The position numbers were made by a program, and so were the translations under genes. The notes below the pieces were generated by a model. It searched no databases. It was not told the DNA's origin and worked only from the letters and a program-made list of their open reading frames with translations. This document shows positions 4,901-47,600 of a DNA stretch of 64,000 bases, piece by piece. The number at the start of each line of letters is the position of its first letter. The first letter of the stretch is position 1. The DNA is taken from the sequence record PP496444.1. One strand, given 5' to 3'.

Positions 4901-5581
4901 ATGACCATTGCACTCTCGAAGTTCGTTGTCACCACGCCGATGACCGCCAAGGTAGTTAAGGGTAAGAACATTGCCCTTACGGTCAAGGGTGACGAGGCAT
5001 GTTCCCGTTGCGCGGAGTTCATCTCGGTCAACGCTGACGAAGAACTGGACTTGTTCGCACCGACCCACGGCGCGGCCACCGAGTCGGTACACAGAACACG
5101 TACCGAACTGATGGAAGAAGACTACTGGGCTTTGGACTCTGCCGCTCACCACTGGCTGCGCATGGCGATGACCGTCAAGTGCGTCAACCAAGGCGGCCGT
5201 GTGGTAATTGCCCAGTGCCACGTGAAGAACAGCAACAACCCGATGATCAAGATCTTTTGGGACAAGGGTGCCATCAAGATCGGCTTCCGTCGAAAGGAAA
5301 GCGATGAGCCTGTCACCACCACCGTCCGCAAGGGCGTCAAGGAAGGTGATCGGTTGGCACTGGCACTTCACCTAACCAAAGCGGGCAGCGTCTCGTTGAA
5401 CGTATCGTCGAATGGCCAGAAGGATAACTTCACCGAGAAGCTGGACCCGTCGTGGCAAGACTTCACGTTGAACTTCCACGCCGGCCTGTACAACCAGCTG
5501 GACTACTCGGACAAGATCCCGACCACTGACTGCTCCCGTGCGACCATCCACACGCTGGGCGTAGACCACGACGCAGCCTAA
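4901..5581 (+). CDS. polysaccharide lyase family 7 (alginate lyase-like), no signal peptide
   Basis: The three PL7 motifs in order: RTELME (RxELRE), IAQCH (QIH), FHAGLYNQ (YFKAGxYxQ). Confidence 0.75.
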   Translation: MTIALSKFVVTTPMTAKVVKGKNIALTVKGDEACSRCAEFISVNADEELDLFAPTHGAATESVHRTRTELMEEDYWALDSAAHHWLRMAMTVKCVNQGGRVVIAQCHVKNSNNPMIKIFWDKGAIKIGFRRKESDEPVTTTVRKGVKEGDRLALALHLTKAGSVSLNVSSNGQKDNFTEKLDPSWQDFTLNFHAGLYNQLDYSDKIPTTDCSRATIHTLGVDHDAA

Positions 5582-5680: not shown

Positions 5681-5726
5681 AAAAAGCCCCACTCACTCGG
5701 CACTTGACCGGATGGTGGGGCTTTTT
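5681..5726. terminator. bidirectional intrinsic terminator between convergent genes
   Basis: AAAAAGCCCCAC (5681-92) / GTGGGGCTTTTT (5715-26) inverted repeat with A/T tracts on both sides. Confidence 0.85.
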
Positions 5727-5730
5727 CGTC

Positions 5731-8577
5731 TTACATGGTTACCAAGGTGATGAAGCGGTTCGACATTGCACGCGCAGTCAGAAGAGTTGTCAGCAATCCT
5801 GTATCTGCCCGGTACTTCAATACCACCTTGTACACTTTGCCCGGCGTCAGACCAGTCGCCACATACTCCCAAGAGCAAGTTGCGGCGGCAGCGGAGTAGC
5901 AGCTACGTGCATCATCTGCTGGCAACACCACCGTTGCGTCTTGACTCAGGACGAAGCTGACTCGCGTACCTGCAGCGCACTGTGCACCAAAGGTAATACG
6001 GATCAGTCCCGATGCCCCACACGTGATCTGCGAAGTCGGTCCCACGGTGGCTAGGTCAACGTACGTCGTGCTCAGTGTACCTTCAGCTGCGGGGATTGTG
6101 TTGTTGACCAGACCAGTGGTGTTCGGCGGCGTAGCGTACGTGCCGTCTGCTCGGAGGAACTTGCCAGTGTCAGCAATCTTCGGCGCCGGAACCAGACCAT
6201 GCTTGCCATCGGCAGTGACAGTAGATCCAACCATGTCGGCAAGCCCGGCCAGCACGTTCGCCATGAAGGTGGAACTGTCCTTGACCGCCATCAGGCTGCG
6301 CCCGTAATCCGTGGTCAGGAACGCCTTCACCGAACTTGCCAGTGCATCCCCCATGAGTACAGCATTCTCAGGAAGGGACAGCGCCGAGATGTTGCTGAGG
6401 ATCGTAGCTTTGGCTTGATACCCCGACAGGTCTGGTGGTGCCACAACGGGTTGACTGCCTTCCAGCTCCACCGTGGTCACCTTGATGGCGTTGTCCGGTA
6501 TTGCAGGCTCGGTGACCAGTCCATTGGTTTCCGTACCTTTGCGCAACTTGAACGTACCGGTCGTGTCCGCGTAGATCAAATCGATCCGTTGCTGACTGGT
6601 ACCTGCTGCGGCAATCGTGAACGTCACTGAGGTACCATTTATCGTGTACGTGGTTCCCTTGATCCGCCACTGGATCTGGTTGCCACTACGCACGGTCAGA
6701 GTGACGTTCAAGCCCACCTGCGTGACTTCCAGCGGAGTCAGCAACCCATCTGCCAATCCCGCTTTCAATGCCAGCTGCTGGGTGATCGAATCCAGTGCCT
6801 GCTGCACCGTCTTGGGAATCGGCTTGTCAGCGTCTGCCGTGTTGTCCACATGATCCAGTCCGATGTTCGCACGCACCTGAGCTTTCTGTGCGTCGGCCAG
6901 CGTCTGAACATTGTAGCGTACCAGTTCGGTGATGCCCAGATTAGCCCTTACCTGTGCACGCTGTTCAACCGTGAAGGTCTGCTCGGCATCATAGCGCAGG
7001 AAGTACCCGGTCAGCAGATCACGCAAGGAGGGACTGTCACCCAAGCCCAGTACCTTCAAACCGAAGTCGGTGTAAGGCACATTGACGTTGCTGCCGTCCA
7101 GCTTGAAACCTAGGAGTGTGGCCGGAGTGGTTCCCATCTTGGCGAGTGCATCCAGTACCAAACTCTTGGCTTGGAACCCGGACAGATCCGGTGGTGTCAC
7201 CATTGGCTGTGCACCTTCCACGAACACCGAGGTGATCCGAATGGTGTTGGCCGGGAGTGCAGGCTCTACTGCGGTGACGTTGGACTCCACGCCTTTGAGG
7301 ACGTGCACGGTGCCTGTGATGTCGCCGTACAACAGGTCGTAACGCTGCATACCCACGCCAGACGCATCCAGCACGAAGGATACCGAAGGTGTTGGTGACG
7401 TGTAGGTTACCCCGTCGATCCGCCATTGCAGGTTGCTGCCGGTGTCACTTGCCAGTCCGATCATCAGACCGTTGTTGCTGGTCGAGATGGGAGTGAGCAA
7501 ACCGTCCTGCAGATCAGCCTTTCCGTCCAGCAACGTCAAGATGTTGGACAGCTGGTGCATGACCGAGGTGGGGATGGGCTTGTCGATGTCGGCGGTATTA
7601 TCCACCTTGTCCAAGTTCAGGTCAGCCAGTGTCACCGCACCTGTCAGTCCATTGATCGACGCCACCATCAGGCTATCCTTGAGCCGGTCCCACGTGGTGC
7701 CGTTGGAGATGATCCAGTCACCGATCTGCCATTCCTTGTTGCCATCGATGTTGGTCGTGCCTGCCACCTTGACGATGTAATACAGGCCCTTGTTCGCCGT
7801 GCTTGCCGCTGGCATGCTCGGAAGGTTCTTGTCCGCATCCCACGTCCCGGCATATCGCAGGCTACCGAGGATGGATTCAGGAAGAAAGGACAGATCGATC
7901 TTCCGATTGTCGTCCAGTGGTACGATACCACCTGCCTGCCCCTTGAGCATAGAGTCCAGTTTGGAATCTAGCGCCATCTGCTGCGGAATGGAGATGGGTT
8001 TCTCCAGATCCGGGATGTTGCTCACGTGTTCCAGACCAACCGCTGCGGGTGTCAGCACGTCGAGCAGGCGGTCACCCCGGATGTACTGGCGATACGTACC
8101 CAGAGGGATCAGGGAACTGATATCCGGCGCAGTCACCTTACCCAAGTCAGCCAACGTTCCGTCTGTGTACATCACCATCAGGTTACCGGCACCGTTGATC
8201 ATCGACGAGGCAATGCCCCGGCCCGCAGACCCTTTCACCGTACCAGCCATCTCCTGATCACCGTTGGCATAGGTGATGAGCAAGCGCCCATCCGCCGTCA
8301 CCTGAGCTTTCTGTACCACCTTGCCCGTGGTATCGCTACTGGCGTCAGAGGTAAGCTGAGCCTGCGCAGAAGTGAATGATTCATAGCTGGTCATCAATGA
8401 CGGGCGGGAGCAGATCAGCAACTTGCGGTTGACCAGCTTCGACAACTCTTTCCAGTTGGTGTCTACGAAGGGCAGTGGCACATAGTACCAGTCGTCTACC
8501 CGCATGCGTTGTCCGTTAACCTGAACATCTTGTTTCACGTTCGGAAATTTCCGGAAGCCTACTAATACGTTATCCAT
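5731..8577 (-). CDS. modular virion fibre protein (head or tail fibre)
   Basis: Fibre motifs LDKVDNTADIDKP (x3 variants), QKAQVRANIG, GTWDA..GDWIISNGTTW, GLVPAP..KFLRADGTYATP; start moved from GTG 8586 to ATG 8577 behind AGGTG. Confidence 0.75.
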   Translation of the reverse strand: MDNVLVGFRKFPNVKQDVQVNGQRMRVDDWYYVPLPFVDTNWKELSKLVNRKLLICSRPSLMTSYESFTSAQAQLTSDASSDTTGKVVQKAQVTADGRLLITYANGDQEMAGTVKGSAGRGIASSMINGAGNLMVMYTDGTLADLGKVTAPDISSLIPLGTYRQYIRGDRLLDVLTPAAVGLEHVSNIPDLEKPISIPQQMALDSKLDSMLKGQAGGIVPLDDNRKIDLSFLPESILGSLRYAGTWDADKNLPSMPAASTANKGLYYIVKVAGTTNIDGNKEWQIGDWIISNGTTWDRLKDSLMVASINGLTGAVTLADLNLDKVDNTADIDKPIPTSVMHQLSNILTLLDGKADLQDGLLTPISTSNNGLMIGLASDTGSNLQWRIDGVTYTSPTPSVSFVLDASGVGMQRYDLLYGDITGTVHVLKGVESNVTAVEPALPANTIRITSVFVEGAQPMVTPPDLSGFQAKSLVLDALAKMGTTPATLLGFKLDGSNVNVPYTDFGLKVLGLGDSPSLRDLLTGYFLRYDAEQTFTVEQRAQVRANLGITELVRYNVQTLADAQKAQVRANIGLDHVDNTADADKPIPKTVQQALDSITQQLALKAGLADGLLTPLEVTQVGLNVTLTVRSGNQIQWRIKGTTYTINGTSVTFTIAAAGTSQQRIDLIYADTTGTFKLRKGTETNGLVTEPAIPDNAIKVTTVELEGSQPVVAPPDLSGYQAKATILSNISALSLPENAVLMGDALASSVKAFLTTDYGRSLMAVKDSSTFMANVLAGLADMVGSTVTADGKHGLVPAPKIADTGKFLRADGTYATPPNTTGLVNNTIPAAEGTLSTTYVDLATVGPTSQITCGASGLIRITFGAQCAAGTRVSFVLSQDATVVLPADDARSCYSAAAATCSWEYVATGLTPGKVYKVVLKYRADTGLLTTLLTARAMSNRFITLVTM
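6408..7615 (-). repeat. internal ~150-aa duplication in the fibre gene (about 7165-7615 and 6408-6860)
   Basis: LDKVDNTADIDKPIP..DGLLTP..QWRIDG..QRYDLLYGD.TGT..PPDLSGFQAK versus LDHVDNTADADKPIP..DGLLTP..QWRIKG..QRIDLIYADTTGT..PPDLSGYQAK. Confidence 0.9.
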
Positions 8578-8606
8578 TATACGCACCTATAACCGGACTA
8601 CAGAAT

Positions 8607-8638
8607 AAAAACGGGGAACCAGTTTAAGGGTTCCCCGT
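8607..8638 (-). terminator. intrinsic terminator after the SGNH fibre gene
   Basis: ACGGGGAACC / GGTTCCCCGT hairpin followed by a T run on the - strand. Confidence 0.75.
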
Positions 8639-8658
8639 GGGACTTAGATTTAGGTAGA

Positions 8659-11208
8659 TTAGATCAGGTTTGCTTTACGGATGAAGCAGCAAGGGATGTC
8701 AATGGTCAAGGAAGACGCAATACCTGTGGCCGTGAACATCGGACGGAACTCGATAGCCAGTGAGGCTGGAACCGTAGCTGGAACTGTGTAAGGCGCCGAC
8801 AGGGAAACCCCGGTGAAAGCCTCTACTACGGAAGCAGGCATCATGTTGTCACCACCCAACGACAGACCACCGTATACACGATCTGCTGCAACGTTCGGGT
8901 CGATCATCACGGTCGGAGCCGAGAAGTTCACGTGACCCGCAGCGGCTACAACCTCGTAACCAGCGACCAACACGTCACCCGGCGAGCAACTCGGTGCAAT
9001 GCTTGGGGTACGCAGGCGTACATACGCGTTGGTGGCCGTTGTGGTGCCTGACACGACCATGCGATATGCGCCACGGCCGTCTGCCAGTGTTACAAAGCTA
9101 CCGACTACGGTGAGACCGTTGGACGTGGACAGGGTGTAGTTGGTTGGAACCACACCAGTTGCACCTGCACCCAGCGTACCCGTAGTACCTTGCATCATCG
9201 GGTTGGAGTTGAGGCAACCGCCGGGGTTGGCTACAGCATCGAACAGGTCGCCGTTGGACGATGGCACCCAGTTGGCAGGTGGTACGAACTTGATCAGTTC
9301 CTGTGCACCGAGCTTACCTGTGAGGTAACCGATACCTGGACTGTTGTGCAGGCCGTCTTGGTTGATCATGTTCGGCAGTGGAATGCCTACCAGAGCAGCC
9401 GGATCAACGGCACGAGGCCATACGTCGATGACGGTGATAAGCGGGTCAGCACGCAACGATCTGATCCAGTTAGCGTAACGGTACATCAGCTTGTAGGAAT
9501 CAGACGACATGTAACCTGTGGTGCCTACAACGGTGCCATAACCACGAGGCCATTCAGCGATGATGCAGATCTTCTTGCCCAGATCCTTGAATTTCTGGAT
9601 GATCGCCAGCAAGTCAGACTGCATGCTTGCCAGAGGAATTAGGGAGTTGATGCTGTTGGTGCCGATCAGGATCAGAGCAATGTCGTAACCTGCCGAACTC
9701 GGCTTCATGCCGTAGGCGTTGGCTACGTCACCGATTACTCGGTCTTTCAGGTTGGTAACGCTGTCGCCCGATACGCCAAAGTTGAAAAGGTGGTTACGTA
9801 GGAGCCGACCGTGAGACAGGGTCTGAATCCACCATACTGGACTTCGAGCCAGAGGGGCTGGAACTGTCAAGCTGGCGTACGATTCGTTCTGGTAGGTCCG
9901 GCTGTCACCGAATACGGCAATGGTGCGCTGAGGCGTAGTGAGCCAGCCGGGCAACCCATCTTTGCCGTTCGTGCCATTAGTCCCGTTCGTGCCATTGGTG
10001 ACTGTAGGCGCTATTACCCACGCACCGTTCTTACGTTGATACGCGTTGGTATCCTTTGGTGCATCGAGGAGATAGTTACTCAGGTCTTGAGCAGTGTACG
10101 GCGTCCACGTCTTCCCTACGGCCAGATAGGATTTGCCATCCTCTGGTGCCGATGGCATCAGCCCATCCAGATCTGTTTTGCTTGCCAGATTAGCAATTTC
10201 GGTCTTGGTCGCTGCGGCGGATACGCCCTGACCCAAAGTACTGAGCGAGTTAGCCAGACCGTTGATCGTGTTGATCTCTTGAGTACCCGTGTGAGTACCC
10301 CGGTCACGAAGGCTGGCGTCCGTATCGTTCTTGGTGGCGCCGACGGCAATACCCGTGAGCTTGTCTTTGTCGGCGGTTACGTAGGCGTTGGTGTCCGGGT
10401 TGCTTTCGTACAGGGTCTTAACCTGTGAAGCCGTCAGCGGGGTAGAACTACTGGAACTCAAGATCCACTTGCTGTCCGAAGCGTCCCAGATATACCGGGT
10501 GGCATCCGCGCCCGCAGTGTCTACATCGGCGTAGTTACCTGCAACCGGGTTGGCTACCCCTGCGGTAAGCGCGGACAGCGACGTGAACGTACCTCGGAAC
10601 ATCGGGCCTTCAATCCCGGCCAGCTTGGTCTTCTCCGATTGGGTGAAGTTGGCCTGGGACAGCGAGTAGCCCGTCTGCTTTTCTACCTTGGTGTCCATCA
10701 AGTTCTGCAAGACGGCCCGCACGTAGGCATCGTCATAGTTGAACAGGTTGGCCAGCTTGGTCTTCTGCGCTGCATCGAAATCGTTGGTGGACAACGCCTT
10801 GCCGGGAACAACGGCGACCGCACCGATGTCGGAGGCCTTACTCGGGATATACGGGGCGTCTACCAGATCCTCGAACAATCCGGAAATGGCTACCTTGGCG
10901 AGTCCGGGAACAGTACCTGAACCGCCACCCGATCCATCGCCTGCAGCCACTGCCGCCGCCGTACTGGTACTGATCGAGGGGTCCATAACTCGACGATGGA
11001 ACTCGTCTGCGGTGGCGTAGGAAAGGATAGACTCTTCAGAACAAGCAAGCCAACCCCGTGCTACTTGAGCCCGCAGCATCTCGAAACTTTTCAGTAAGAA
11101 TCTTTCAGTGGGGTAGAAGAACCGACCCTCCGTCAGCGTAGTCCCCTCGATGGATAGTCCCTTCGGGGCGGATGCCGTTCGTTTAAAGCCAATAGATGAT
11201 GCTGCCAT
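8659..11208 (-). CDS. modular fibre/spike protein with foldon-like and collagen-like segments, SGNH hydrolase and C-terminal beta-sandwich
   Basis: Fibre motifs (LAKVAISG..DL, GKALSTNDF..QKTKL, LRDRGTHTGTQ); DAPKDTNAYQRKNGAWV; (GTN)n GKDGLPG; SGNH blocks FGDSRT, GVSG, IGTNS, DGLH. Confidence 0.8.
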   Translation of the reverse strand: MAASSIGFKRTASAPKGLSIEGTTLTEGRFFYPTERFLLKSFEMLRAQVARGWLACSEESILSYATADEFHRRVMDPSISTSTAAAVAAGDGSGGGSGTVPGLAKVAISGLFEDLVDAPYIPSKASDIGAVAVVPGKALSTNDFDAAQKTKLANLFNYDDAYVRAVLQNLMDTKVEKQTGYSLSQANFTQSEKTKLAGIEGPMFRGTFTSLSALTAGVANPVAGNYADVDTAGADATRYIWDASDSKWILSSSSSTPLTASQVKTLYESNPDTNAYVTADKDKLTGIAVGATKNDTDASLRDRGTHTGTQEINTINGLANSLSTLGQGVSAAATKTEIANLASKTDLDGLMPSAPEDGKSYLAVGKTWTPYTAQDLSNYLLDAPKDTNAYQRKNGAWVIAPTVTNGTNGTNGTNGKDGLPGWLTTPQRTIAVFGDSRTYQNESYASLTVPAPLARSPVWWIQTLSHGRLLRNHLFNFGVSGDSVTNLKDRVIGDVANAYGMKPSSAGYDIALILIGTNSINSLIPLASMQSDLLAIIQKFKDLGKKICIIAEWPRGYGTVVGTTGYMSSDSYKLMYRYANWIRSLRADPLITVIDVWPRAVDPAALVGIPLPNMINQDGLHNSPGIGYLTGKLGAQELIKFVPPANWVPSSNGDLFDAVANPGGCLNSNPMMQGTTGTLGAGATGVVPTNYTLSTSNGLTVVGSFVTLADGRGAYRMVVSGTTTATNAYVRLRTPSIAPSCSPGDVLVAGYEVVAAAGHVNFSAPTVMIDPNVAADRVYGGLSLGGDNMMPASVVEAFTGVSLSAPYTVPATVPASLAIEFRPMFTATGIASSLTIDIPCCFIRKANLI

Positions 11209-11344
11209 TATAATCTCCAGTTCGGTCCTAACTGCGTGTATTGTCTATACCACCTTTTATTAGGTGGGACGGAATGCCCGAAAACAAATCTGGGAAATAA
11301 CGTCCGGATTTAACCTGGTATGCGTGTAATTAGGTGGTTCAGAC

Positions 11345-11378
11345 AAATAAAAGCCCGCACGGCTGGGCCAATGCGGGC
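11345..11378 (-). terminator. intrinsic terminator
   Basis: GCCCGCA / TGCGGGC hairpin plus TTTTATTT just after the stop at 11384. Confidence 0.75.
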
Positions 11379-31155: not shown

Positions 31156-34100
31156 TTAATATTCGATGAGGATGAAGCCCGGCATGCCTTGGCTACCAGC
31201 ACCACCTGAACCGGCAATGGTGGTGCTTGGGGCATAAGCAGAACCACCACCGCCACCACCTGCACCGTACCCAGTGCCGTTACGGCCCGGCTGAGCACCA
31301 CCTTGAGCAGCTCGGCTACCCCCACCTGCAGTACCGAATGGAGTAGATCCACCAGTACCACCATTACCACCGAGGGTGTAGATGATCGAACCCGAACTAT
31401 CTGCGGAGCGGAAACCGTCACCACCTTGAGTCGCCCCCAGTCCAGCGGACAGACCACCGGCACCAGAAACTGTACCCCCAGCTTGACCAGCGATACCACC
31501 ACCATAGGTTACGATGCCTGCAATCGTGGTGTTCCCGCCGTTACCGCCGTTAGTGCCGTTACCTGCGTTACTACCCGTCAGCTGTGTAGCAACTCCGCCT
31601 TGACCAGCGCTACCTCGGGCACCAATGGTGATCGCGTAACTCTGACCTGGAACTACGGTGTAGGGTTCGCAGATACCGTATTGGGCTGCACCACCACCAC
31701 CACCACCACCTGAACCAGTCGGGGAGTTACCTGCACCCCCGCCACCGCCACCGCCACCGCCACAACCCGAGACGAATATCCGGGTAACGCCGGGAGGGCA
31801 TACCCAAGTACCACTGGTTGCAAATACGTCTTTGCCCGTGATTCGAGCGATTGCCTCGTTAGGGGAATCAATAGAACCTCGGTCAACAACCCAGTAGGTA
31901 GTACCACTGGCCGTAAGCTCCATCGTCTCGTACGGTTGCAACGTGATCGATTGAAGCGAGGTGACCGTGGAGATTGAGGAACCGGATGGCGCCGTCAACG
32001 TCTGAACGGTTGAAGTCGGGTTACGGAAAACGAACGTCTGACCTGCGCCAATCGTGGTGATGTCCGGCAGGGTGATGTTCAACGAACTCCCCGCCAGGTT
32101 CAACCAATAACCAGCATGAGAGGAGTCCATCACCAGGTTGGTCGTTACCCCGATGCCCACACCTTTGAACTTACGTGCAGATGAAAAGTTCAAGTTCTGG
32201 GCGTACTGCGTGGTTGCCAACTTGTTGCTGTTGTCTGTTGTAACAGGCGTTGGTGCAGTTGGTGTACCAGCCAGAGCTGGGGAATCCAGTGCAGCAGACT
32301 CGCTCCATGCCGACCAGTTCCCGCCCGCCTGACTCCGCCAGAACATCCGGTTACCCGATGTGAGTGCCGTTGCAATCTGGAGACAGCCTCCAGAGTTATA
32401 AGGCACCACGATAACTGAGAAGTTAGCCGAGATCGGGATGTTGGCAGTGGTAGACGAGGCGCGGTACAAGCCGCCGAGTACCGCCTGGTTCATGTCGTTG
32501 CCGGTGACGATGTTGCTTGTGGTAGTTCCCAGACCCCATGCAGCCAATTGAGCTGTTACGAAAGCCGTGTTGGCGATGGTCAGGTCATTGTCGCCCAGTG
32601 CAGCGGTCGGAGCCTGCGGATCGCCAGTTAATACCGGAGAGTTGGTACTCGCAATCTCAGCCCATGGATACCAAGTCGAATCGTGCTTGACCCGCGTGAA
32701 GGTACGGTTGCGACCAGCCCCAAAGACTGAGTTGGCGTACTGGGTGACTCGCGCTGCACCAGATACCCCAACGGTGATCAAGGTGAAGGCTACTGCCGTT
32801 GTGCTGCCGATGCCCAGCAAAGGTCGGTTGTACGTGGTCGAGTTAGCCTCAGTACCTTCAGCCTTGACGAAGGAGTTCAACGGCGCATCGTTGAAGTTCA
32901 GAGTGTCACCGCTGATTGCCTGCCCACCCAAACCGGAAGCATTCAACAAGCCTTGAACAAACGCGGTGTTCGCGATAGTCAGGTCGCTGTCCGACAATGC
33001 AGCAGTCGGAACCTTTGGATCACCGGTGAATGTAGGCGAGTCCAACCCAGCGATCTCGCGCCATGCTGACCACTGCGTGACGTTGTTCACCTGCCCATTG
33101 GAATATCGCTGGAACATGCGGTTAGTAGCCTGCGGCATGAAAACCTGCTGGCTGTAATACAAGGCATTGCTTGAAACGATCACAACACCGGACAGGTAGT
33201 TCGCACCGTTGATCGTGATAGTGGAACTAACCTGATACGTACCGCCTTCGGTCAGTGTATTGACGTCGGCGGTGGTATCATCCAGATCCGCTGTACCGAT
33301 ACCATACTTCGCCATGACTGCGCGAACGAACGCCGTTGTTGCGAGCGAGGTGTCGTTGTCAGTAGTGGCCGGGGTTGGTGCCTTCGGGTCACCCGTGAAC
33401 ACCGGGGAGTCCAGACCAGCGAACTCTTTCCATGCGTTCCATGCGTTGGAAGAACGAGTACGCCAGAAGATACGGAGTGGGTTAGCGGGGGTTGCCCAGA
33501 TCTGCAATGCTGCGCTGCCGTCTCCGAACGGAGTATGGATCAGCAGGCCGTTAGACGCAACCGGCAGGCCTGTGGCCGTGGTCGCGGCGTTGTAGTAGAA
33601 GCCACCGTTGATGACGGAGTTCAGATCGGTGACGTTGGTTGCACCTGCTGTACCTACACCAAGAGCGGCCATGGCCGCTCTTACGAACGCCGTGGTAGCA
33701 ATAGAGGTGTCGTTGTCGGTAGCCGCTGCCGTCGGAGCCTTCGGATCACCCGTCAAGGTTGGCGAATCAATCGGAGCCTTGGTCGCGATCAGCGCGTTGA
33801 TCGTGGTCGCGAAGTTGGGATCGTCTCCCAGTGCCGCAGCTAGTTCGTTCAGAGTGTCCAATGCACCTGGCGACGAATCAACCAATGCCGCAATTGCCAG
33901 CTTCACGAAGGCCGTGGTGGCAATCGATGTATCGTTGTCTGTCAGCGGTGGGGTTGGAGCCTTCGGATCACCGAGGAAGGTCGGGCTGGTGATTGGGGCA
34001 TACGCCGTCAAGTCAACCTTCGAGCCGCTTACCAGTTGGAAGCGCGTGCCGTCGTAGAAGACGTCGTGCACTTTGCCGACCGACAACTCACCGCCTGTGA

Positions 34101-35193
34101 GCGAGTCAGTCCCGTTGACCGAGATCGACTTGGCACCCAGACCGTTGATGTTCAGGGAGGCAGAGCTGGTGTTGGCCGTAGCCACCGTGAACTGGAAGCG
34201 CTGGCCTGCCGCGTAGGCTGTCATCACCTGACCCAGTGCACCCGCCGTTGGCAGCGTGGCAGACAGGGTGTTGGTGGTGGACTGCGTGACCTGACCGAGG
34301 AAGGTAAGCGCCATGCCGCGCTGTGCTGTGGTCTTGACGAAGCCCGAAGTGAGCGAGTCGTCTACTACGCGCCAGCCCGTGGTGCCGTCAACGTACTGGT
34401 AACCTTTGACGCCGCTGATGAACTGGATGTTGTCAGAACCAACAACGGTGCCCTCGAAAGACTGACCTGCAGCCGCTGTGACCGTGATCGGGAACTGGTT
34501 GGAGTTCTTGGAGTAGTCGCCGACGAACACCAGGTCACCTACGCGACCCGCTGGCAATACTACCTTGGGGTTGGCGATGGCGTTGGTGTTGTTGATCCAA
34601 AGCATCTCACCTTTGCCGACCGTGATGTTGGCGGCGGTCGGAATCACGACCCGGCTGTTACCGAAACCGCCGACACCCATCTGACCTACGGCCAGTTGAG
34701 AATCCCACGATGCGCCGTTCCAGATGAACCGGTAGTCGGCGTACGGGGTTGCCATGATGAAGGTAGGCAAGCCGTCGATGCTGGTGCCGTTACCCGAGAT
34801 GGTCACCGGGTACGTGCCGATGGTGCCGCCCGTAACCTGAACCCGCACCGCATCACCTACGACCAGTGCGGTACGTTTGGTGACGTCTGTCTGGTTGGGT
34901 ACCTGCTTGTCCGTCGGCAGGAGCATGGTGACCGGGTTGAGCAACGCCTGATGCTGGTACATGCCGTTGGCAAGCAGCAGAGTGTTGTTGTCCGAACCGT
35001 TGGTGGTGCCCAGTGTCAGGTAACCGCCAATGGCTTGTTGCAGCATCTCAGTGCTCTGATACAGGTTATAGATCGGCCTGTTCAGTACACCTTCCGTGGG
35101 TACGGGTGGTTCTTGGATCGAACCGTCAGCATGCTCGCCGTCTTTAAACCAGCCGATCAATGCTTTCGGAATGAATCTTAAATTGATAGCCAT
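31156..35193 (-). CDS. long tail fibre protein (1345 aa)
   Basis: Six SP.(F/L).G.P.APT..TDND..IATTAFV repeats; SSPGALDTLNELAAALGDDPNFATT; knob-like modules; Gly-rich C-terminal domain. Confidence 0.92.
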   Translation of the reverse strand: MAINLRFIPKALIGWFKDGEHADGSIQEPPVPTEGVLNRPIYNLYQSTEMLQQAIGGYLTLGTTNGSDNNTLLLANGMYQHQALLNPVTMLLPTDKQVPNQTDVTKRTALVVGDAVRVQVTGGTIGTYPVTISGNGTSIDGLPTFIMATPYADYRFIWNGASWDSQLAVGQMGVGGFGNSRVVIPTAANITVGKGEMLWINNTNAIANPKVVLPAGRVGDLVFVGDYSKNSNQFPITVTAAAGQSFEGTVVGSDNIQFISGVKGYQYVDGTTGWRVVDDSLTSGFVKTTAQRGMALTFLGQVTQSTTNTLSATLPTAGALGQVMTAYAAGQRFQFTVATANTSSASLNINGLGAKSISVNGTDSLTGGELSVGKVHDVFYDGTRFQLVSGSKVDLTAYAPITSPTFLGDPKAPTPPLTDNDTSIATTAFVKLAIAALVDSSPGALDTLNELAAALGDDPNFATTINALIATKAPIDSPTLTGDPKAPTAAATDNDTSIATTAFVRAAMAALGVGTAGATNVTDLNSVINGGFYYNAATTATGLPVASNGLLIHTPFGDGSAALQIWATPANPLRIFWRTRSSNAWNAWKEFAGLDSPVFTGDPKAPTPATTDNDTSLATTAFVRAVMAKYGIGTADLDDTTADVNTLTEGGTYQVSSTITINGANYLSGVVIVSSNALYYSQQVFMPQATNRMFQRYSNGQVNNVTQWSAWREIAGLDSPTFTGDPKVPTAALSDSDLTIANTAFVQGLLNASGLGGQAISGDTLNFNDAPLNSFVKAEGTEANSTTYNRPLLGIGSTTAVAFTLITVGVSGAARVTQYANSVFGAGRNRTFTRVKHDSTWYPWAEIASTNSPVLTGDPQAPTAALGDNDLTIANTAFVTAQLAAWGLGTTTSNIVTGNDMNQAVLGGLYRASSTTANIPISANFSVIVVPYNSGGCLQIATALTSGNRMFWRSQAGGNWSAWSESAALDSPALAGTPTAPTPVTTDNSNKLATTQYAQNLNFSSARKFKGVGIGVTTNLVMDSSHAGYWLNLAGSSLNITLPDITTIGAGQTFVFRNPTSTVQTLTAPSGSSISTVTSLQSITLQPYETMELTASGTTYWVVDRGSIDSPNEAIARITGKDVFATSGTWVCPPGVTRIFVSGCGGGGGGGGGAGNSPTGSGGGGGGGAAQYGICEPYTVVPGQSYAITIGARGSAGQGGVATQLTGSNAGNGTNGGNGGNTTIAGIVTYGGGIAGQAGGTVSGAGGLSAGLGATQGGDGFRSADSSGSIIYTLGGNGGTGGSTPFGTAGGGSRAAQGGAQPGRNGTGYGAGGGGGGSAYAPSTTIAGSGGAGSQGMPGFILIEY

Positions 35194-39602: not shown

Positions 39603-40610
39603 TCAGGCGAGGAATCTGTGTAAGCCCGAGGAATATTTGTTCTGGTACATGGTCATCACCTTATTGGACGCGGTGGTGGCTCTATTACCAGATCGGTTAA
39701 ACGACATATGCAGCCAAGGGCGGTTCCCGTGCTCAAAGATGAACTGGTCATAGTTGATGTTGTCTTTGACCCAATTGGCACGATCCCAATACTCTTGATT
39801 GCTAATGCCGGGCCACTGTACATCGATGGCTTGCCCCGTCTCATGTTGGGACCTACCATTCTGCTGTGTACGAAAACCGGAGTTGAAGGAGAAACCTGGG
39901 TAGGCGTCCCACAATGGTTCCAGTATATGCTCGGCCAATGCCTTGAGGTTGCACACGATCTCCTGTTCCGTCAAGCCCCGTTGAGCCTTGATGGTGTGAG
40001 GGAACGCAGTCTTGATCGACACGTTAGCCAGCGTAAACCTTGCGGATAAACGCATGCCGTAGTCCAGCGGTAGAGTAATCATGGCGCAGTCAGTGATCGG
40101 CGTAACTCGGTCTGGCGGGGCTACCGTGTTCTCTTCCTGCGCGGGTGTATCGATTGGCGGTGGAGGTGAAGTCTGGGGCGCCGGTGGGTAGCTCATCTGC
40201 GGAGTACCGGGACTGGTCTCGTATTCATCCGCGAAGGCATCGTAACCGACATTCCGAATAAGCTTGGCTGCGTTCTCGGGGCTGGTCTGATCCACCGGAA
40301 TGATGGTGGCGGCAACAATCTCCACCTTACCCTTATCCGATGTACCGTCACCTACCAGCACCGTGGGCGAACCGGTCATGGGCGCGTCATTGTCTTGGAA
40401 CCCATCACCCATGCGGGCGACCGGAAGACCGTTGGTGAACACCGTGGCGCTACCCACTCTCTGCGACGTGGGACCGGGTGGACCAATCCAGGTGTCAGTG
40501 ACTCGTACTACAGGGAAGCCATTGACCATGTGGTTAGGTGATCCAGACACTGCCACCCGTTTAGCGTTTGACAAGTCTGGGCCTTGCCGGGCCACTGGTT
40601 TCAATGCCAT
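39603..40610 (-). CDS. PAAR-repeat spike-tip protein fused to a peptidase M15 domain
   Basis: PVARQG, GSPN.MVNGFPVVRVTD, GSATVFTNGLPVARMGD, GSPTVLVG; C-terminal NSGFR..SQH..G.AID and WLHMS. Confidence 0.8.
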   Translation of the reverse strand: MALKPVARQGPDLSNAKRVAVSGSPNHMVNGFPVVRVTDTWIGPPGPTSQRVGSATVFTNGLPVARMGDGFQDNDAPMTGSPTVLVGDGTSDKGKVEIVAATIIPVDQTSPENAAKLIRNVGYDAFADEYETSPGTPQMSYPPAPQTSPPPPIDTPAQEENTVAPPDRVTPITDCAMITLPLDYGMRLSARFTLANVSIKTAFPHTIKAQRGLTEQEIVCNLKALAEHILEPLWDAYPGFSFNSGFRTQQNGRSQHETGQAIDVQWPGISNQEYWDRANWVKDNINYDQFIFEHGNRPWLHMSFNRSGNRATTASNKVMTMYQNKYSSGLHRFLA

Positions 40611-44609: not shown

Positions 44610-47600
44610 TTAGAATGCTGAATTGTTGACCATCATCACCATAATGTCATCGATGTTCTTGGCCGCTTTGGATGTACCGTTGCCAGAGTTGGTGCCGCCA
44701 CCACCAGACTGAATAACCTGTGGAGCTGGCTGCTCTTTAACCGCACTGGTGGTACGGTCCTGCGTTTGGATAAGCGCTGCCGTCTGTGCAGTCTGCAACT
44801 GGGTACGGCTCTCGTTGACGCTGCTTCGGGCCGACCCTACATCCTGCAGAGTTCCGTTGGCGGCATCGATGGACTTCAGAGCACCCTTTACTGGTGCGGG
44901 TGCTGCGTCTACCGGCTTGATCATCGACAAGCGTTGTGCGGGCTCGGTCAGCGTACCTTTGGTGACGGTAGTGTCCGGGGTAGCCGAGGAATCCGCAGGC
45001 TTGCTTTGAATGATCGGGACCGGGCTGGTGATACCCTTGGCCGACATCATGGACTGATTGGCAGCAGGCGTAGCCACGGTGTTGGCTGGCAACGGCGTGA
45101 TGCCTGGAATGAACGGTGGGGTCGGTGCCGCTGTACCTTTGGCGGGTACGTCGGTGGCCGGGCCAGGTTTGCCGATAGCCATTGGCGTTACTATCTTGCC
45201 GTTGGTATCCACCTTAGGCACGGTCATAGATGTGCTGATCGCCGCGTCCACTTTGTTCTTCATGTCCTTGCTGTACTTCTGGGTGTTCTCCGTGCCGTTC
45301 CATGCGTCGAGCATTTCGATGTCCGAGATCTGACCTTGGTAGCCTTCCTGACGGAATACAGCCTTGGCAATCGCCATCATGGTCTTCTGATCGTTCGGGT
45401 CCAGCTTCTGGTTAGGATCGATGCCCGTCTCTTTGGACACGGCAGTCACATATCCGCTGGTATCGTTCTCGTTCGGCGGGGTCAGCTTGTTGACCAGTTG
45501 CTTCAAGGTCATGCCTTCCGCACCTACGTGCTTACGAGCCAGCTTGAACCAAGCCCTTGCGCCGTGCACCACGGTGTCGAACTTCTCGAAACCACCTTCC
45601 TGACCGACTTCGCCTACCCACTGGTTCTTGTCGCTGGCCCGGATGTTACCGGGGTTGAAGTTCCGGGTTGCCAGTGTGGCTTGGCCTTTGAGCGGACCGG
45701 AACCACTGCCCTGATATGATACGCTCTGATCCAGTGTGCCCGGCTGCGGCAGAACAGGAATGGCTTGGCCTTTGATGTTCGGCGACGCACTGATATCCGT
45801 GGATGAGCTGGAGACCTTTTCTTCCTTCGAGTCGAACCACGTCATCGGGTTGATGCGCGTAGCTAGATCCTTGGCTTTGGAAACCAGATCCGCAATACGG
45901 TTCGGGTTGCTGAAGAAGTCAATTGCGGCACCGACTGCGGCACCCGCCGGGCCGAAGATGGCACCCTTGAGTCCGTTCTCCCCAAGATAGTTGTGGGCAG
46001 TGTCCAGCATCTCTGTACCGAGTTTGGTCACAGAGTCGAGTGTACCCGACGCCAGATCCTGCACCGACTTCCAACCTTTGGTGCCCCACGACTCAACGGT
46101 TTCCCAGCCTTTGTTCAAGCCGCCCATCATGTCTTGGGTGAAGCCTTCCATGTACTTCGATGCTTTGTCCAGGCCTGCGCTAACGGTGTCCGTGACGAAC
46201 TTCGAGGCTGGACCCAGTACATCAGTAATCTTGTCCAGTCCGGCATAGATGTCTTTGGTATCGATCAACCCGAAGGTCAATCCCGACGCAATGGACGACA
46301 GTGCAGCCTGTGACTTCTGACCGAACGTAGCATCTTGGCCGGGTTTCAATCCAGCGATATCCGAGGCATTGTTCCAACCGTCGAACCCATCGTATGCCGC
46401 CATTGCAGCGATGCCGATAGGACCTAGCAGTTTGCCTGCCCCGGAGATCAGCCCACGACCCGCACGTAACGCTACCTTACCCCCGGACTTCGCCAATCCA
46501 CCTGCACGGCTGGCGAGCTTGCCTGCACGGGTTGCTGGTCTTGGTCGAGCTGGTGGCGTTACATCCCCGGCAGTGGGACCAGATGGAGTGTGTGGCGTAG
46601 CGGGGTTGCGCGGACTCACCTCACCCGTGACAGTATCCAGAACAGCATCGGATTCCTCACTACGTGCACCTCGGCGCAAGCCTACCAGACCACCGATAGC
46701 CCCGGCACCCGCACCGACCAGCGCAGCCATCTTACCCACGCGTCCAGTAGCGAAGCGGCCAACACCTTTGGCAGCACGCCCCAGACGACTACCGCCACGG
46801 GCTGCACCTTCAGCTGTACCCGCAGCCCCTCTTTCGGCACCCCTACGTGCGGCCCGCCCTGTGAGGATAGCCGAGCCAGCAGCCCCAAGGCCACCCACGA
46901 TACCATCGGACAGACCCAATGCGGCGTCGAAGTTACCCAAGCCCAGAGCGTTGAGGATACCCGAGATGGCAGTGGACGCCGCGCCCTTACCAGCCGCAAC
47001 AATGCCTGGGTTACGGACGAAGCGGTCACTCAGTTTGTTCTTTTGCAGTCCGGTCTCTACGTCGCTGTGATCCAGCAACGACTCATCGAACTTCTCGTTC
47101 AACTCCTTCAGGTTGAATACGATCTTTTCGTCAGTGGTGTCGGCTTGAATGCGTTGCAGGATGTTCGAGACTTTCTTGCTGGTGTGTGCGTTCAGCTTGC
47201 CGTCTGCCCGGAACGCTTTCTGCATTGCCACCACTTGCGCGGCGAACTGCGGAATGGCAGACAGTTGCTTGATCACACCTTGCATCGCGTCCTTGCGTTC
47301 GTTCAGGTTGCCGGACTTCAATGTCTTGATGGCACCGGCCAAGTCAGCATCTACCGACTGGCGCTGGAATGCAACCTTCTCATATCCCTTGAGCATGGTT
47401 GCAATCTGGGCGTATTCCTTCTCCGAGATGTCGCTGTTGTGAGACAGCAGTTTCTCGATGTCTTTCAGCTGCGGGTTGTCTTTAAGCTGGCGGGACTGGC
47501 GCAGGAAACCCACGGTCTCACCGGCAATGGTGCTCCGGTAGTTCTTGCCCAGTCGGCGGTCCGTGATCCGGTCCGTCATCTGATTTACGACTTTGCTGCT

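What the first reader, a model, noticed from the sequence alone, without database searches (positions are those of the whole stretch)
8395..11190. Two adjacent fibre proteins share an otherwise unassigned ~55-aa N-terminal module in ungapped register
Seen: with start 8577, both proteins have GF at residues 7-8 and align without gaps: GFRKFPNVKQDVQVNGQRMRVDDWYYVPLPFVDTNWKELSKLVNRKLLICSRPSL versus GFKRTASAPKGLSIEGTTLTEGRFFYPTERFLLKSFEMLRAQVARGWLACSEESI. Identities are G,F,G,Y,F,L,V,R,L,C,S,S (12 of 55), with many conservative swaps. The rest of the two proteins differs. Inference: a virion-docking adaptor that lets different payloads (binding modules or an esterase) plug into the same capsid or tail site, i.e. 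a modular display system separate from the main tail fibre. I do not recognise the domain.
Basis: partly seen in the sequence, partly recalled or inferred. Interest (0 to 1): 0.75.

Follow-up and report, generated by a model that had tools for sequence, protein, structure and literature searches.

The report
Shared N-terminal anchor of phage fibres
Two neighbouring fibre genes of a 200-kb Pseudomonas putida phage really do begin with the same ~65-residue domain, which a third gene in sister phages also carries; it is most likely a lineage-specific plug that fixes exchangeable fibres and sugar-modifying enzymes to the virus particle, which is a well-known design built here from an undescribed domain.

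Summary
The window is Pseudomonas phage vB_PpuM-Peetri (PP496444.1). Peetri_00091 ('minor tail protein', 948 aa) and Peetri_00092 ('lipase', 849 aa) share an ungapped N-terminal module of about 65 residues, with 12 identities in the quoted 55.

The match is far above shuffled controls. A profile built without gp91 finds gp91 genome-wide at E 1e-5. A third carrier, Voja6_00227 (module plus a different SGNH esterase), sits as a cassette in four of nine sister phages and bridges the two families.

Nothing outside this genus carries the module in 1.8 billion protein representatives, IMG/VR, JGI metagenomes or GTDB genomes. It matches no Pfam, PHROG, PDB or BFVD entry.

From residue ~112-122 onward both proteins are mosaics of widespread tail-fibre modules. 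In Peetri the gp92 payload has been replaced by one typical of P. syringae phages.

Best reading: a genus-specific virion-attachment domain for trimeric side fibres with exchangeable distal parts. This is the known 'conserved N-terminal anchor, variable payload' design. Docking itself, the site and virion presence are all inferred, not shown.

Novelty: new member of a known kind. Interest is moderate to low.

The parts
8659..11208 (-). Peetri_00092 (gp92), 849 aa, annotated 'lipase'. Fibre-like protein made of N-module, Gly/Ser-rich linker, shaft, foldon-like motif, SGNH esterase and a C-terminal beta-rich part.
11011..11208 (-). gp92 N-terminal module, aa 1-66. Similarity to Voja6_00227 runs on to about aa 85.
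   Evidence: AlphaFold2 model with mean pLDDT 80: short strands, helix 35-51, strand, two short helices
10159..10908 (-). gp92 shaft, aa 101-350. It is 82-94% identical in sister phages. From aa ~112 it resembles tail-fibre proteins of Vibrio, Ruegeria, Rhizobium and other phages.
10000..10098 (-). gp92 foldon-like trimerisation motif, aa 371-403. It lies just inside the segment that differs from the sister phages.
   Evidence: Pfam Fibritin_C at 19.2 bits, below its cut-off of 21; PDB hits to a 27-aa 'Fibritin' chain and to the C-terminal ends of engineered trimers
9346..9915 (-). gp92 SGNH/GDSL esterase domain, aa 432-621, with GDS at 434, GTNS at 516 and DGLH at 618.
8662..9933 (-). Peetri-specific payload of gp92, aa ~426-849. 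It is about 20% identical to the payload in sister phages, 63% identical to a protein of P. syringae phage PHB09, and 34-46% identical to many other P. syringae phages.
5731..8577 (-). Peetri_00091 (gp91), 948 aa, annotated 'minor tail protein'. N-module followed by a fibre body built of widespread tail-fibre modules.
8380..8577 (-). gp91 N-terminal module, aa 1-66.
   Evidence: AlphaFold2 without the other families is low-confidence (pLDDT 55) but gives the same order of elements, strands then helix 35-48
7135..7626 (-). gp91 internal repeat, copy 1 (aa 318-481).
   Evidence: 49% identical to copy 2, E 9e-53
6379..6870 (-). gp91 internal repeat, copy 2 (aa 570-733).
5734..6177 (-). gp91 distal part, aa 801-948. 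Residues 801-900 are the least conserved stretch against sister phages (68-76% against about 90% elsewhere), as expected of a receptor-contacting tip.
11352..11369 (-). Terminator-like hairpin between Peetri_00093 and gp92.
   Evidence: consensus scan only
8611..8638 (-). Terminator-like hairpin (10-bp stem, T run) between gp92 and gp91.
   Evidence: consensus scan only

Best explanation
The first ~65 residues of gp91, gp92 and, in four sister phages, Voja6_00227 are one small alpha/beta domain. It has diverged to 20-36% identity, is restricted to this genus of P. putida jumbo myoviruses, and always sits at the extreme N-terminus.

I read it as the virion-attachment (anchor) domain of accessory side fibres. 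On this reading each protein trimerises through its shaft and foldon-like elements. It plugs by its N-terminal domain into the same kind of site on the particle, either a tail or baseplate-periphery protein or an adaptor. It then presents a different distal part:
- a receptor-binding fibre tip in gp91;
- an SGNH esterase that would remove acyl groups from O-antigen or exopolysaccharide in gp92 and Voja6_00227.

Because the anchor is lineage-specific and the distal parts are cosmopolitan, recombination can replace or add payloads without touching the docking interface.

Shown: homology, N-terminal position, three carriers, payload exchange, fibre and esterase identity of the remainder, and absence of the module elsewhere. 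Inferred: virion incorporation, trimer state, docking function, docking site and esterase substrate.
For: **Homology of the module.** Shuffle test 0 of 5000. Genome-wide HMM hit at E 1.1e-5 and hhalign 93.8% against at most 11% in controls. Voja6_00227 matches gp92 at E 1.4e-9 and gp91 at E 0.016 in a six-frame search of the Peetri genome; these are the two best hits, both in register.

**Only three carriers, all starting with the module.**

**Third carrier is a self-contained cassette.** It is a 1.7-kb gene with its own terminator, present in 4 of 9 sister phages and cleanly absent from Peetri.

**gp92 payload exchange.** Residues 1-350 are 82-94% conserved, while residues 351 to the end are replaced in Peetri by a module 63% identical to one in a P. 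syringae phage.

**Payload relatives carry other N-termini.** PHB09_031 homology starts near residue 97. Xanthomonas, Sinorhizobium and Gordonia relatives of Voja6_00227 match only from residue ~134 on, and several are annotated as minor tail proteins.

**Shafts are tail-fibre modules.** They match tail-fibre and minor tail proteins of many phages from residue ~112-122 on, whereas residues 1-~110 match only within the genus (PHROG hits).

**Other support.**
- Foldon-like motif.
- Intact SGNH motifs.
- These phages need O-antigen to infect: 18 of 22 species, including G3, fail on wbpL and wbpM mutants (10.1101/2024.03.26.586772).
- The design is established in other phages with several receptor-binding proteins (PMC6872550).
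Against: - No proteomic or imaging data place either protein in the virion. The source preprint has none.
- No docking partner was identified. No T4gp10-like or other known branching domain was detected in gp91, gp92 or ten baseplate and fibre-cluster proteins.
- The genes lie among replication and recombination genes, 19 kb from the tail module.
- The fold has no significant structural relative that would tie it to a known anchor.
- The model of gp91 alone is low-confidence.
- The module is not more conserved than the shaft between Peetri and its sisters, so there is no special signal of constraint.
Confidence: 0.6

Rival explanations
1. Same anchor idea, but the partner is another fibre or a dedicated adaptor. 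This would be a branched receptor-binding complex as in G7C, K1-5 or the Ackermannviridae, not a direct site on capsid, neck or baseplate.
For: Branched complexes are how most phages with several receptor-binding proteins are built (PMC6872550). Three different proteins share one N-terminal unit. One of them is optional, which is easier to accommodate on a branching adaptor.
Against: No T4gp10-like branching domain was detected in gp91, gp92 or the baseplate-cluster proteins with Pfam or PHROGs. The module is a 65-residue folded domain, not a 7-29-residue docking peptide.
Confidence: 0.2
2. The shared module is only a relic of tandem duplication. It would serve the fibre itself, for example as a trimer nucleation or folding cap at the N-terminus, and not as a docking unit.
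For: gp91 and gp92 are adjacent and co-oriented, as expected after duplication. Nothing demonstrates an external interface.
Against: Everything else in the three proteins has been replaced, while this unit was kept at 20-36% identity and in exact N-terminal register. One carrier lies 115 kb away in sister genomes. Payload relatives in other phages fold without it.
Confidence: 0.12
3. The proteins are soluble enzymes or lectins released at lysis and are not virion parts. The N-module would then target something in the cell or on the cell surface.
For: PHROGs file the esterase payload under 'moron / auxiliary'. The neighbouring alginate lyase has no such module and may well be soluble. The genes lie outside the tail cluster.
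Against: Both proteins have long shafts homologous to tail-fibre and minor tail proteins and a foldon-like motif. There is no signal-peptide-like hydrophobic N-terminus (sequence).
Confidence: 0.07
4. Chance resemblance of two unrelated N-termini.
For: The full-length pairwise BLASTP is not significant, and identity is only 22%.
Against: Shuffle test 0 of 5000. Genome-wide profile hit at E 1.1e-5. A bridging third family exists.
Confidence: 0.01

Closest known systems
Conserved N-terminal anchor domains and 'conserved peptides' of phages with several receptor-binding proteins (Klebsiella KP32-, Menlow- and PhiK64-1-group phages; E. coli G7C and K1-5; Ackermannviridae TSP1-4), as reviewed in PMC6872550
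   Same: Several receptor-binding or enzymatic proteins of one phage share a lineage-specific N-terminus. The central and C-terminal parts are diverse and horizontally exchanged. One of the proteins may be optional. G7C also carries an SGNH esterase as payload (my own knowledge of G7C gp63.1; the branched G7C complex is described).
   Different: There is no sequence or fold similarity to those anchors. No T4gp10-like branching domain was found. The unit is a 65-residue folded domain, neither a short peptide nor a ~150-residue T7 gp17-type anchor. The genes lie far from the tail cluster.
T4 fibritin (Wac) collar and whisker fibre
   Same: gp92 has a foldon-like motif. The gene lies away from the baseplate genes. 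It is a fibre attached by its N-terminus (attachment of Wac by its N-terminus is my own knowledge).
   Different: The Fibritin_C score is below Pfam's cut-off. The motif is internal, not C-terminal. Nothing matches the fibritin N-terminal or coiled-coil parts.
SGNH/GDSL esterase-bearing tail proteins of P. syringae, Xanthomonas, Sinorhizobium and Gordonia phages (PHROG 6102, 19495, 8480)
   Same: The payloads of gp92 and Voja6_00227 are members: E 4e-51 to 1e-86 and 2e-65 against these PHROGs, and up to 63% identity to PHB09.
   Different: Those proteins have their own, unrelated N-termini. The N-module studied here is absent from them.

Membership tests
Any described protein family, for the N-module | Significant match of residues 1-70 to a Pfam, PHROG or PDB sequence profile | tested here: not met
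   No Pfam or PHROG hit covers residues 1-110 of either protein. The PDB profile search gives a best E of 0.054, to an unrelated protein.
Any known fold of a phage fibre anchor (T7 gp17 N-terminus, P22 tailspike head-binding domain, T4 gp10/gp12 N-termini) | Structural match of the predicted N-module to a solved or predicted anchor domain | tested here: not met
   Foldseek against PDB gives a best E of 2.5 (B. subtilis YqbF, TM 0.37). Against BFVD the best E is 0.15, to 51-68-residue uncharacterised phage proteins. None of the named anchors came back.
Branched receptor-binding complex of the G7C / Ackermannviridae type | A T4gp10-like branching domain in a primary fibre or adaptor | tested here: not met
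   No such Pfam or PHROG hit in gp91, gp92 or ten proteins of the baseplate and fibre cluster. Profile libraries may miss remote versions.
Branched receptor-binding complex of the G7C / Ackermannviridae type | Secondary fibres share a conserved N-terminal docking element | tested here: met
   Three protein families share the N-module.
Branched receptor-binding complex of the G7C / Ackermannviridae type | Physical attachment of the N-terminus to the partner in the virion | not testable with these tools
   Needs virion proteomics or cryo-EM.
SGNH/GDSL hydrolases (gp92 payload) | Pfam PF13472 above the gathering score, with Ser (GDS), Gly/Asn and Asp-x-x-His blocks present | tested here: met
   49.5 bits against a cut-off of 32.9. 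GDS at 434, GTNS at 516, DGLH at 618.
T4 fibritin | Fibritin_C (foldon) above the gathering score at the C-terminus, preceded by a coiled coil | tested here: not met
   19.2 bits against a cut-off of 21, at an internal position 348-402 of 849. A foldon-like motif only.
Phage tail fibre / minor tail proteins (gp91 and gp92 bodies) | Significant similarity of the shaft to annotated tail-fibre proteins | tested here: met
   phrog_13892 'minor tail protein' at E 7e-27 and others. tblastn hits to tail-fibre and minor tail genes of Gordonia, Agrobacterium, Rhizobium, Vibrio and Salinivibrio phages. The annotations in those records are themselves mostly predictions.

The most novel reading that the evidence does not exclude
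The module is a new structural class of docking domain that roots accessory fibres at an unusual place, such as the neck, sheath or capsid of a jumbo myovirus. Its cognate receptor protein would be an undescribed socket that accepts any protein bearing the 65-residue domain. That would make it a natural plug-in display system distinct from T4gp10-type branching.
Probability: 0.12. Interest if true: 0.55.

Novelty: new member of a known kind. Interest (0 to 1): 0.33.

Why it matters
The result gives a concrete, testable annotation for the first ~65 residues of three 'lipase', 'minor tail' and 'hypothetical' proteins in a newly described genus of P. putida jumbo phages. It also marks where the lineage-specific part ends and the exchangeable, host-facing parts begin.

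It shows natural module exchange between P. putida and P. syringae phages at a defined junction. It adds one more unrelated solution to the general rule that phages keep a private anchor and trade payloads.

It does not open a new class of mechanism. The docking site and partner remain unknown, and only those could turn out to be surprising.

Tried and rejected
**Searches for relatives outside the genus.** All returned only genus members.
- tblastn of both N-termini against 50,697 phage records.
- Word-indexed protein searches restricted to residues 1-70 of gp92 and of P0005.
- A full HMMER scan of 1.84 billion representatives with the two-sequence profile.
- Pattern scans of IMG/VR, JGI metagenomes and GTDB genomes.

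**Hits rejected as chance.**
- The MW202496 tblastn hit (E 0.2) lies on the opposite strand of a portal gene.
- P0003, P0004 and P0006 match only profile positions ~10-43, 5 to 18 times per protein. P0004 and P0006 were read and are repeat proteins that match through a recurring short Trp/Tyr-rich motif. P0003 was not read. All three are treated as repeat-inflated scores, not relatives.

**Structure.**
- Fold searches of the pLDDT-80 model gave nothing significant.
- The independent model of gp91 was too poor (pLDDT 55) for a fold comparison. Only the order of secondary-structure elements could be compared.

**Docking partner.** The search for a T4gp10-like domain among baseplate proteins was negative.

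**Shared promoter.** By eye there is no common motif upstream of gp91, gp92 and structural genes. A CCTAAT-type candidate is not enriched: 2 matches against 1.1 expected.

- In some searches my script read 'P0005' and 'P0001' from an alignment file with gaps. In one search this merely shortened the Voja6_00227 slice to 69 residues. The motif positions printed for those two proteins were wrong and are corrected.
- I stopped and it entered no tool call or result. The foldon-likeness stated here rests only.
Full report
**Identity of the window.** Window 5700-11300 is 100% identical to Pseudomonas phage vB_PpuM-Peetri, PP496444.1 (window position = record position minus 62000). Peetri is a 200,264-bp myovirus of P. 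putida from the CEPEST collection. Eight sister phages are about 83% identical over this region. The source preprint places all nine in a new genus cluster, G3, of jumbo phages (10.1101/2024.03.26.586772).

The finding covers the 5' ends of two co-oriented minus-strand genes:
- Peetri_00091, 'minor tail protein', window 5731-8577, 948 aa;
- Peetri_00092, 'lipase', window 8659-11208, 849 aa.

It has a Shine-Dalgarno-like AGGTG at the same spacing as the GGAG of gp92. Each gene is preceded by a terminator-like hairpin.

- The best ungapped segment scores 53 (BLOSUM62), against 18.7 +/- 3.3 in 5000 shuffles, none of which reached it.
- Pairwise BLASTP is significant only when the search space is restricted: E 5e-4, against about 68 for full length versus full length. 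I therefore tested it with profiles.
- hhalign of five gp91 orthologs against five gp92 orthologs gives 88.6% probability over columns 4-62 in register.
- Adding the third family raises this to 93.8%, while 200 column-shuffled controls never exceeded 11%.
- An HMM built only from gp92 orthologs and the third family, containing no gp91 sequence, retrieves gp91 residues 5-68 at E 1.1e-5 among all 2622 stop-to-stop ORFs of the Peetri genome. The next hit has E 0.63.

No third copy exists in Peetri. Outside the module the two proteins share nothing significant.

**A third carrier.** A profile of the two N-termini was scanned against 1.84 billion representative proteins. It found the gp91 and gp92 orthologs and one further N-terminal, in-register hit, P0005 (544 aa, E 9.5e-6, profile positions 5-62 on residues 3-59).
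- P0005 is Voja6_00227 of sister phage Voja-6, encoded just upstream of the DNA polymerase gene.
- It consists of the module, an unrelated middle part and a different SGNH esterase (PF13472; GDS 348, GTND 415, DGIH 518).
- Its module is 32-35% identical to that of gp92 (E 2e-11 and 1.4e-9) and 23% identical to that of gp91 (E 0.016). These are the two best hits in a six-frame search of the whole Peetri genome.
- The gene is complete in Voja-6, KoPa-5, Amme-1 and Pori-4 and absent from the other five phages.
- Against Peetri it is a clean 1.7-kb insertion or deletion comprising the gene, about 58 nt upstream and its own terminator hairpin.
- The three-family alignment keeps G7, F8, G22, Y32, L45, V49, C56 and S57 (gp92 numbering) invariant.

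**Where else does the module occur?** Nowhere that I could detect.
- tblastn of either N-terminus against 50,697 phage records returns only the nine genus members. A chance hit lies on the wrong strand of a portal gene.
- Word-indexed searches of 5.8 billion proteins return only genus members.
- Pattern scans of IMG/VR, JGI metagenomes and GTDB genomes return nothing.
- Three further hits match only a short internal part of the profile many times per protein. The two I read are repeat proteins. I treat all three as repeat-inflated scores.
- No Pfam or PHROG model covers residues 1-110 of any carrier, and a PDB profile search finds nothing.

**Structure.** AlphaFold2 on gp92 residues 1-85, with the five-sequence, three-family alignment, gives mean pLDDT 79.9 and pTM 0.66. 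The model has short strands, a helix at 35-51, a strand at 54-56, helices at 59-63 and 67-75, and then disorder.

Foldseek finds no significant relative. Against PDB the best E is 2.5. Against BFVD the best E is 0.15, to 51-68-residue uncharacterised phage proteins.

An independent run on gp91 with only its own ortholog is low-confidence (pLDDT 54.8). It gives the same order of elements, strands followed by a helix at 35-48. This is consistent with a shared fold but is not a test of it.

**What the rest of the proteins are.**
- *gp92.* After a Gly/Ser-rich linker, residues ~112-350 resemble tail-fibre proteins of Vibrio, Ruegeria, Salinivibrio, Rhizobium and other phages. Residues 371-403 form a foldon-like motif: Pfam Fibritin_C at 19.2 bits, just under its cut-off of 21, plus PDB hits to a 27-residue 'Fibritin' chain and to the C-terminal ends of engineered trimeric constructs, which I take to be their foldon tags. 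Residues 432-621 are an SGNH esterase with intact catalytic blocks.
- *gp91.* From residue ~122 it matches minor tail and tail-fibre proteins of Gordonia, Agrobacterium, Rhizobium and Janthinobacterium phages. It contains an internal duplication, 318-481 against 570-733, at 49% identity. Its least conserved stretch against the sister phages is 801-900.

Both are therefore fibre-type proteins assembled from cosmopolitan modules behind a private N-terminus.

**Payload exchange.** Peetri gp92 is 82-94% identical to Voja-6 and Aura gp92 over residues 1-350, but only about 20% identical from 351 to the end.
- The Peetri-specific part (aa ~426-845) is 63% identical to PHB09_031 of a P. syringae pv. 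actinidiae phage. It is 34-46% identical to proteins of many other P. syringae phages.
- In PHB09 the homology begins near residue 97, behind a different N-terminus.
- Likewise the payload of Voja6_00227 (aa ~134-540) matches proteins of Xanthomonas, Sinorhizobium and Gordonia phages. Several are annotated as minor tail proteins, and the match never includes the module.

**Mechanism.** The pattern is a lineage-restricted unit at the extreme N-terminus, kept in three otherwise unrelated fibre or enzyme proteins, with distal parts replaced or added by recombination. This is the signature of a virion-attachment domain.

It corresponds to the established 'anchor domain / conserved peptide plus variable payload' architecture of phages with several receptor-binding proteins (PMC6872550). 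The esterases fit a role in modifying O-antigen or exopolysaccharide. G3 phages, like 18 of the 22 CEPEST species, cannot infect O-antigen-deficient mutants.

I put about 0.6 on the anchor function. A further 0.2 goes to the branched-complex variant, in which the partner is another fibre or adaptor. The site is unknown. I found no T4gp10-like branching domain in gp91, gp92 or ten baseplate-cluster proteins, and no proteomic or imaging data exist for these phages.

Remaining alternatives are a fibre-intrinsic folding cap retained after tandem duplication (0.12) and soluble, non-virion enzymes (0.07). Chance is excluded.

**Comparison and novelty.** Functionally this is the known design. As a sequence and fold family the module is undescribed and, so far, confined to nine genomes. 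It differs from described anchors in three ways:
- it is a ~65-residue folded unit, neither a 7-29-residue peptide nor a T7 gp17-type domain;
- it is encoded 19 kb away from the tail genes;
- it precedes esterases twice.

I rate it a new member of a known kind, of moderate-to-low interest (0.33). The interest would rise only if the docking site proved unusual.

All functional statements beyond homology and domain content are inferences. Two script errors (gapped P0005 and P0001 sequences) were found and corrected and do not affect the conclusions.

Noticed in passing
window 4901-5581 (+), Peetri_00090: This gene is annotated 'hypothetical protein' but is a full-length alginate lyase (Pfam PF08787 Alginate_lyase2, E 2e-34, 120 bits against a cut-off of 29.7). 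It is convergent with gp91 and lacks the N-module. Together with gp91 and gp92 it forms a small cluster of genes aimed at surface polysaccharide.
   Followed up: partly
window 8662-10158 (-), gp92 aa 351-849: The distal half of gp92 is replaced in Peetri relative to all eight sister phages. The replacement is closest (63%) to a protein of P. syringae phage PHB09. The CEPEST preprint reports Peetri as the only G3 phage that lyses P. syringae B728a. This is a correlation only and is confounded by the next item.
   Followed up: partly
window 31156-35193 (-), Peetri_00117 main tail fibre: tblastn matches the sister phages only over residues 1-1190 of 1345, at 78% identity. The C-terminal ~155 residues, inside the Gly_rich_2 domain, also differ in Peetri. 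Peetri therefore differs from its sisters at the tips of at least two fibre proteins.
   Followed up: partly
L011 9943-11665 (Voja-6, PP496442.1 about 186734-188456); Peetri counterpart L009 about 45131-45137: Voja6_00227 sits in a moron-like cassette (short leader, gene, own terminator hairpin). The cassette is inserted directly after the terminator of the upstream gene and ahead of the DNA polymerase gene. It is present in 4 of 9 genus members.
   Followed up: yes
window 6379-6870 and 7135-7626 (-): gp91 contains a 164-residue internal duplication (49% identity, E 9e-53). Each copy starts with a motif typical of tail-fibre repeats.
   Followed up: partly
window 39603-40610 (-), Peetri_00123: A PAAR domain (PF05488, aa 19-69) is fused to a C-terminal part that matches an endolysin PHROG (phrog_894, aa 184-328, E 2.6e-10). 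This may be a spike tip carrying a wall-degrading domain.
   Followed up: no
BFVD hits to model m525679fd1267: The best structural neighbours of the N-module are many 50-70-residue uncharacterised phage proteins, for example from Xanthomonas phage DIBBI (Foldseek probability 0.96 but E 0.15, TM 0.72 on the target). The best PDB neighbour is the prophage protein YqbF. None is significant, but the recurrence of tiny phage proteins is unexplained.
   Followed up: no
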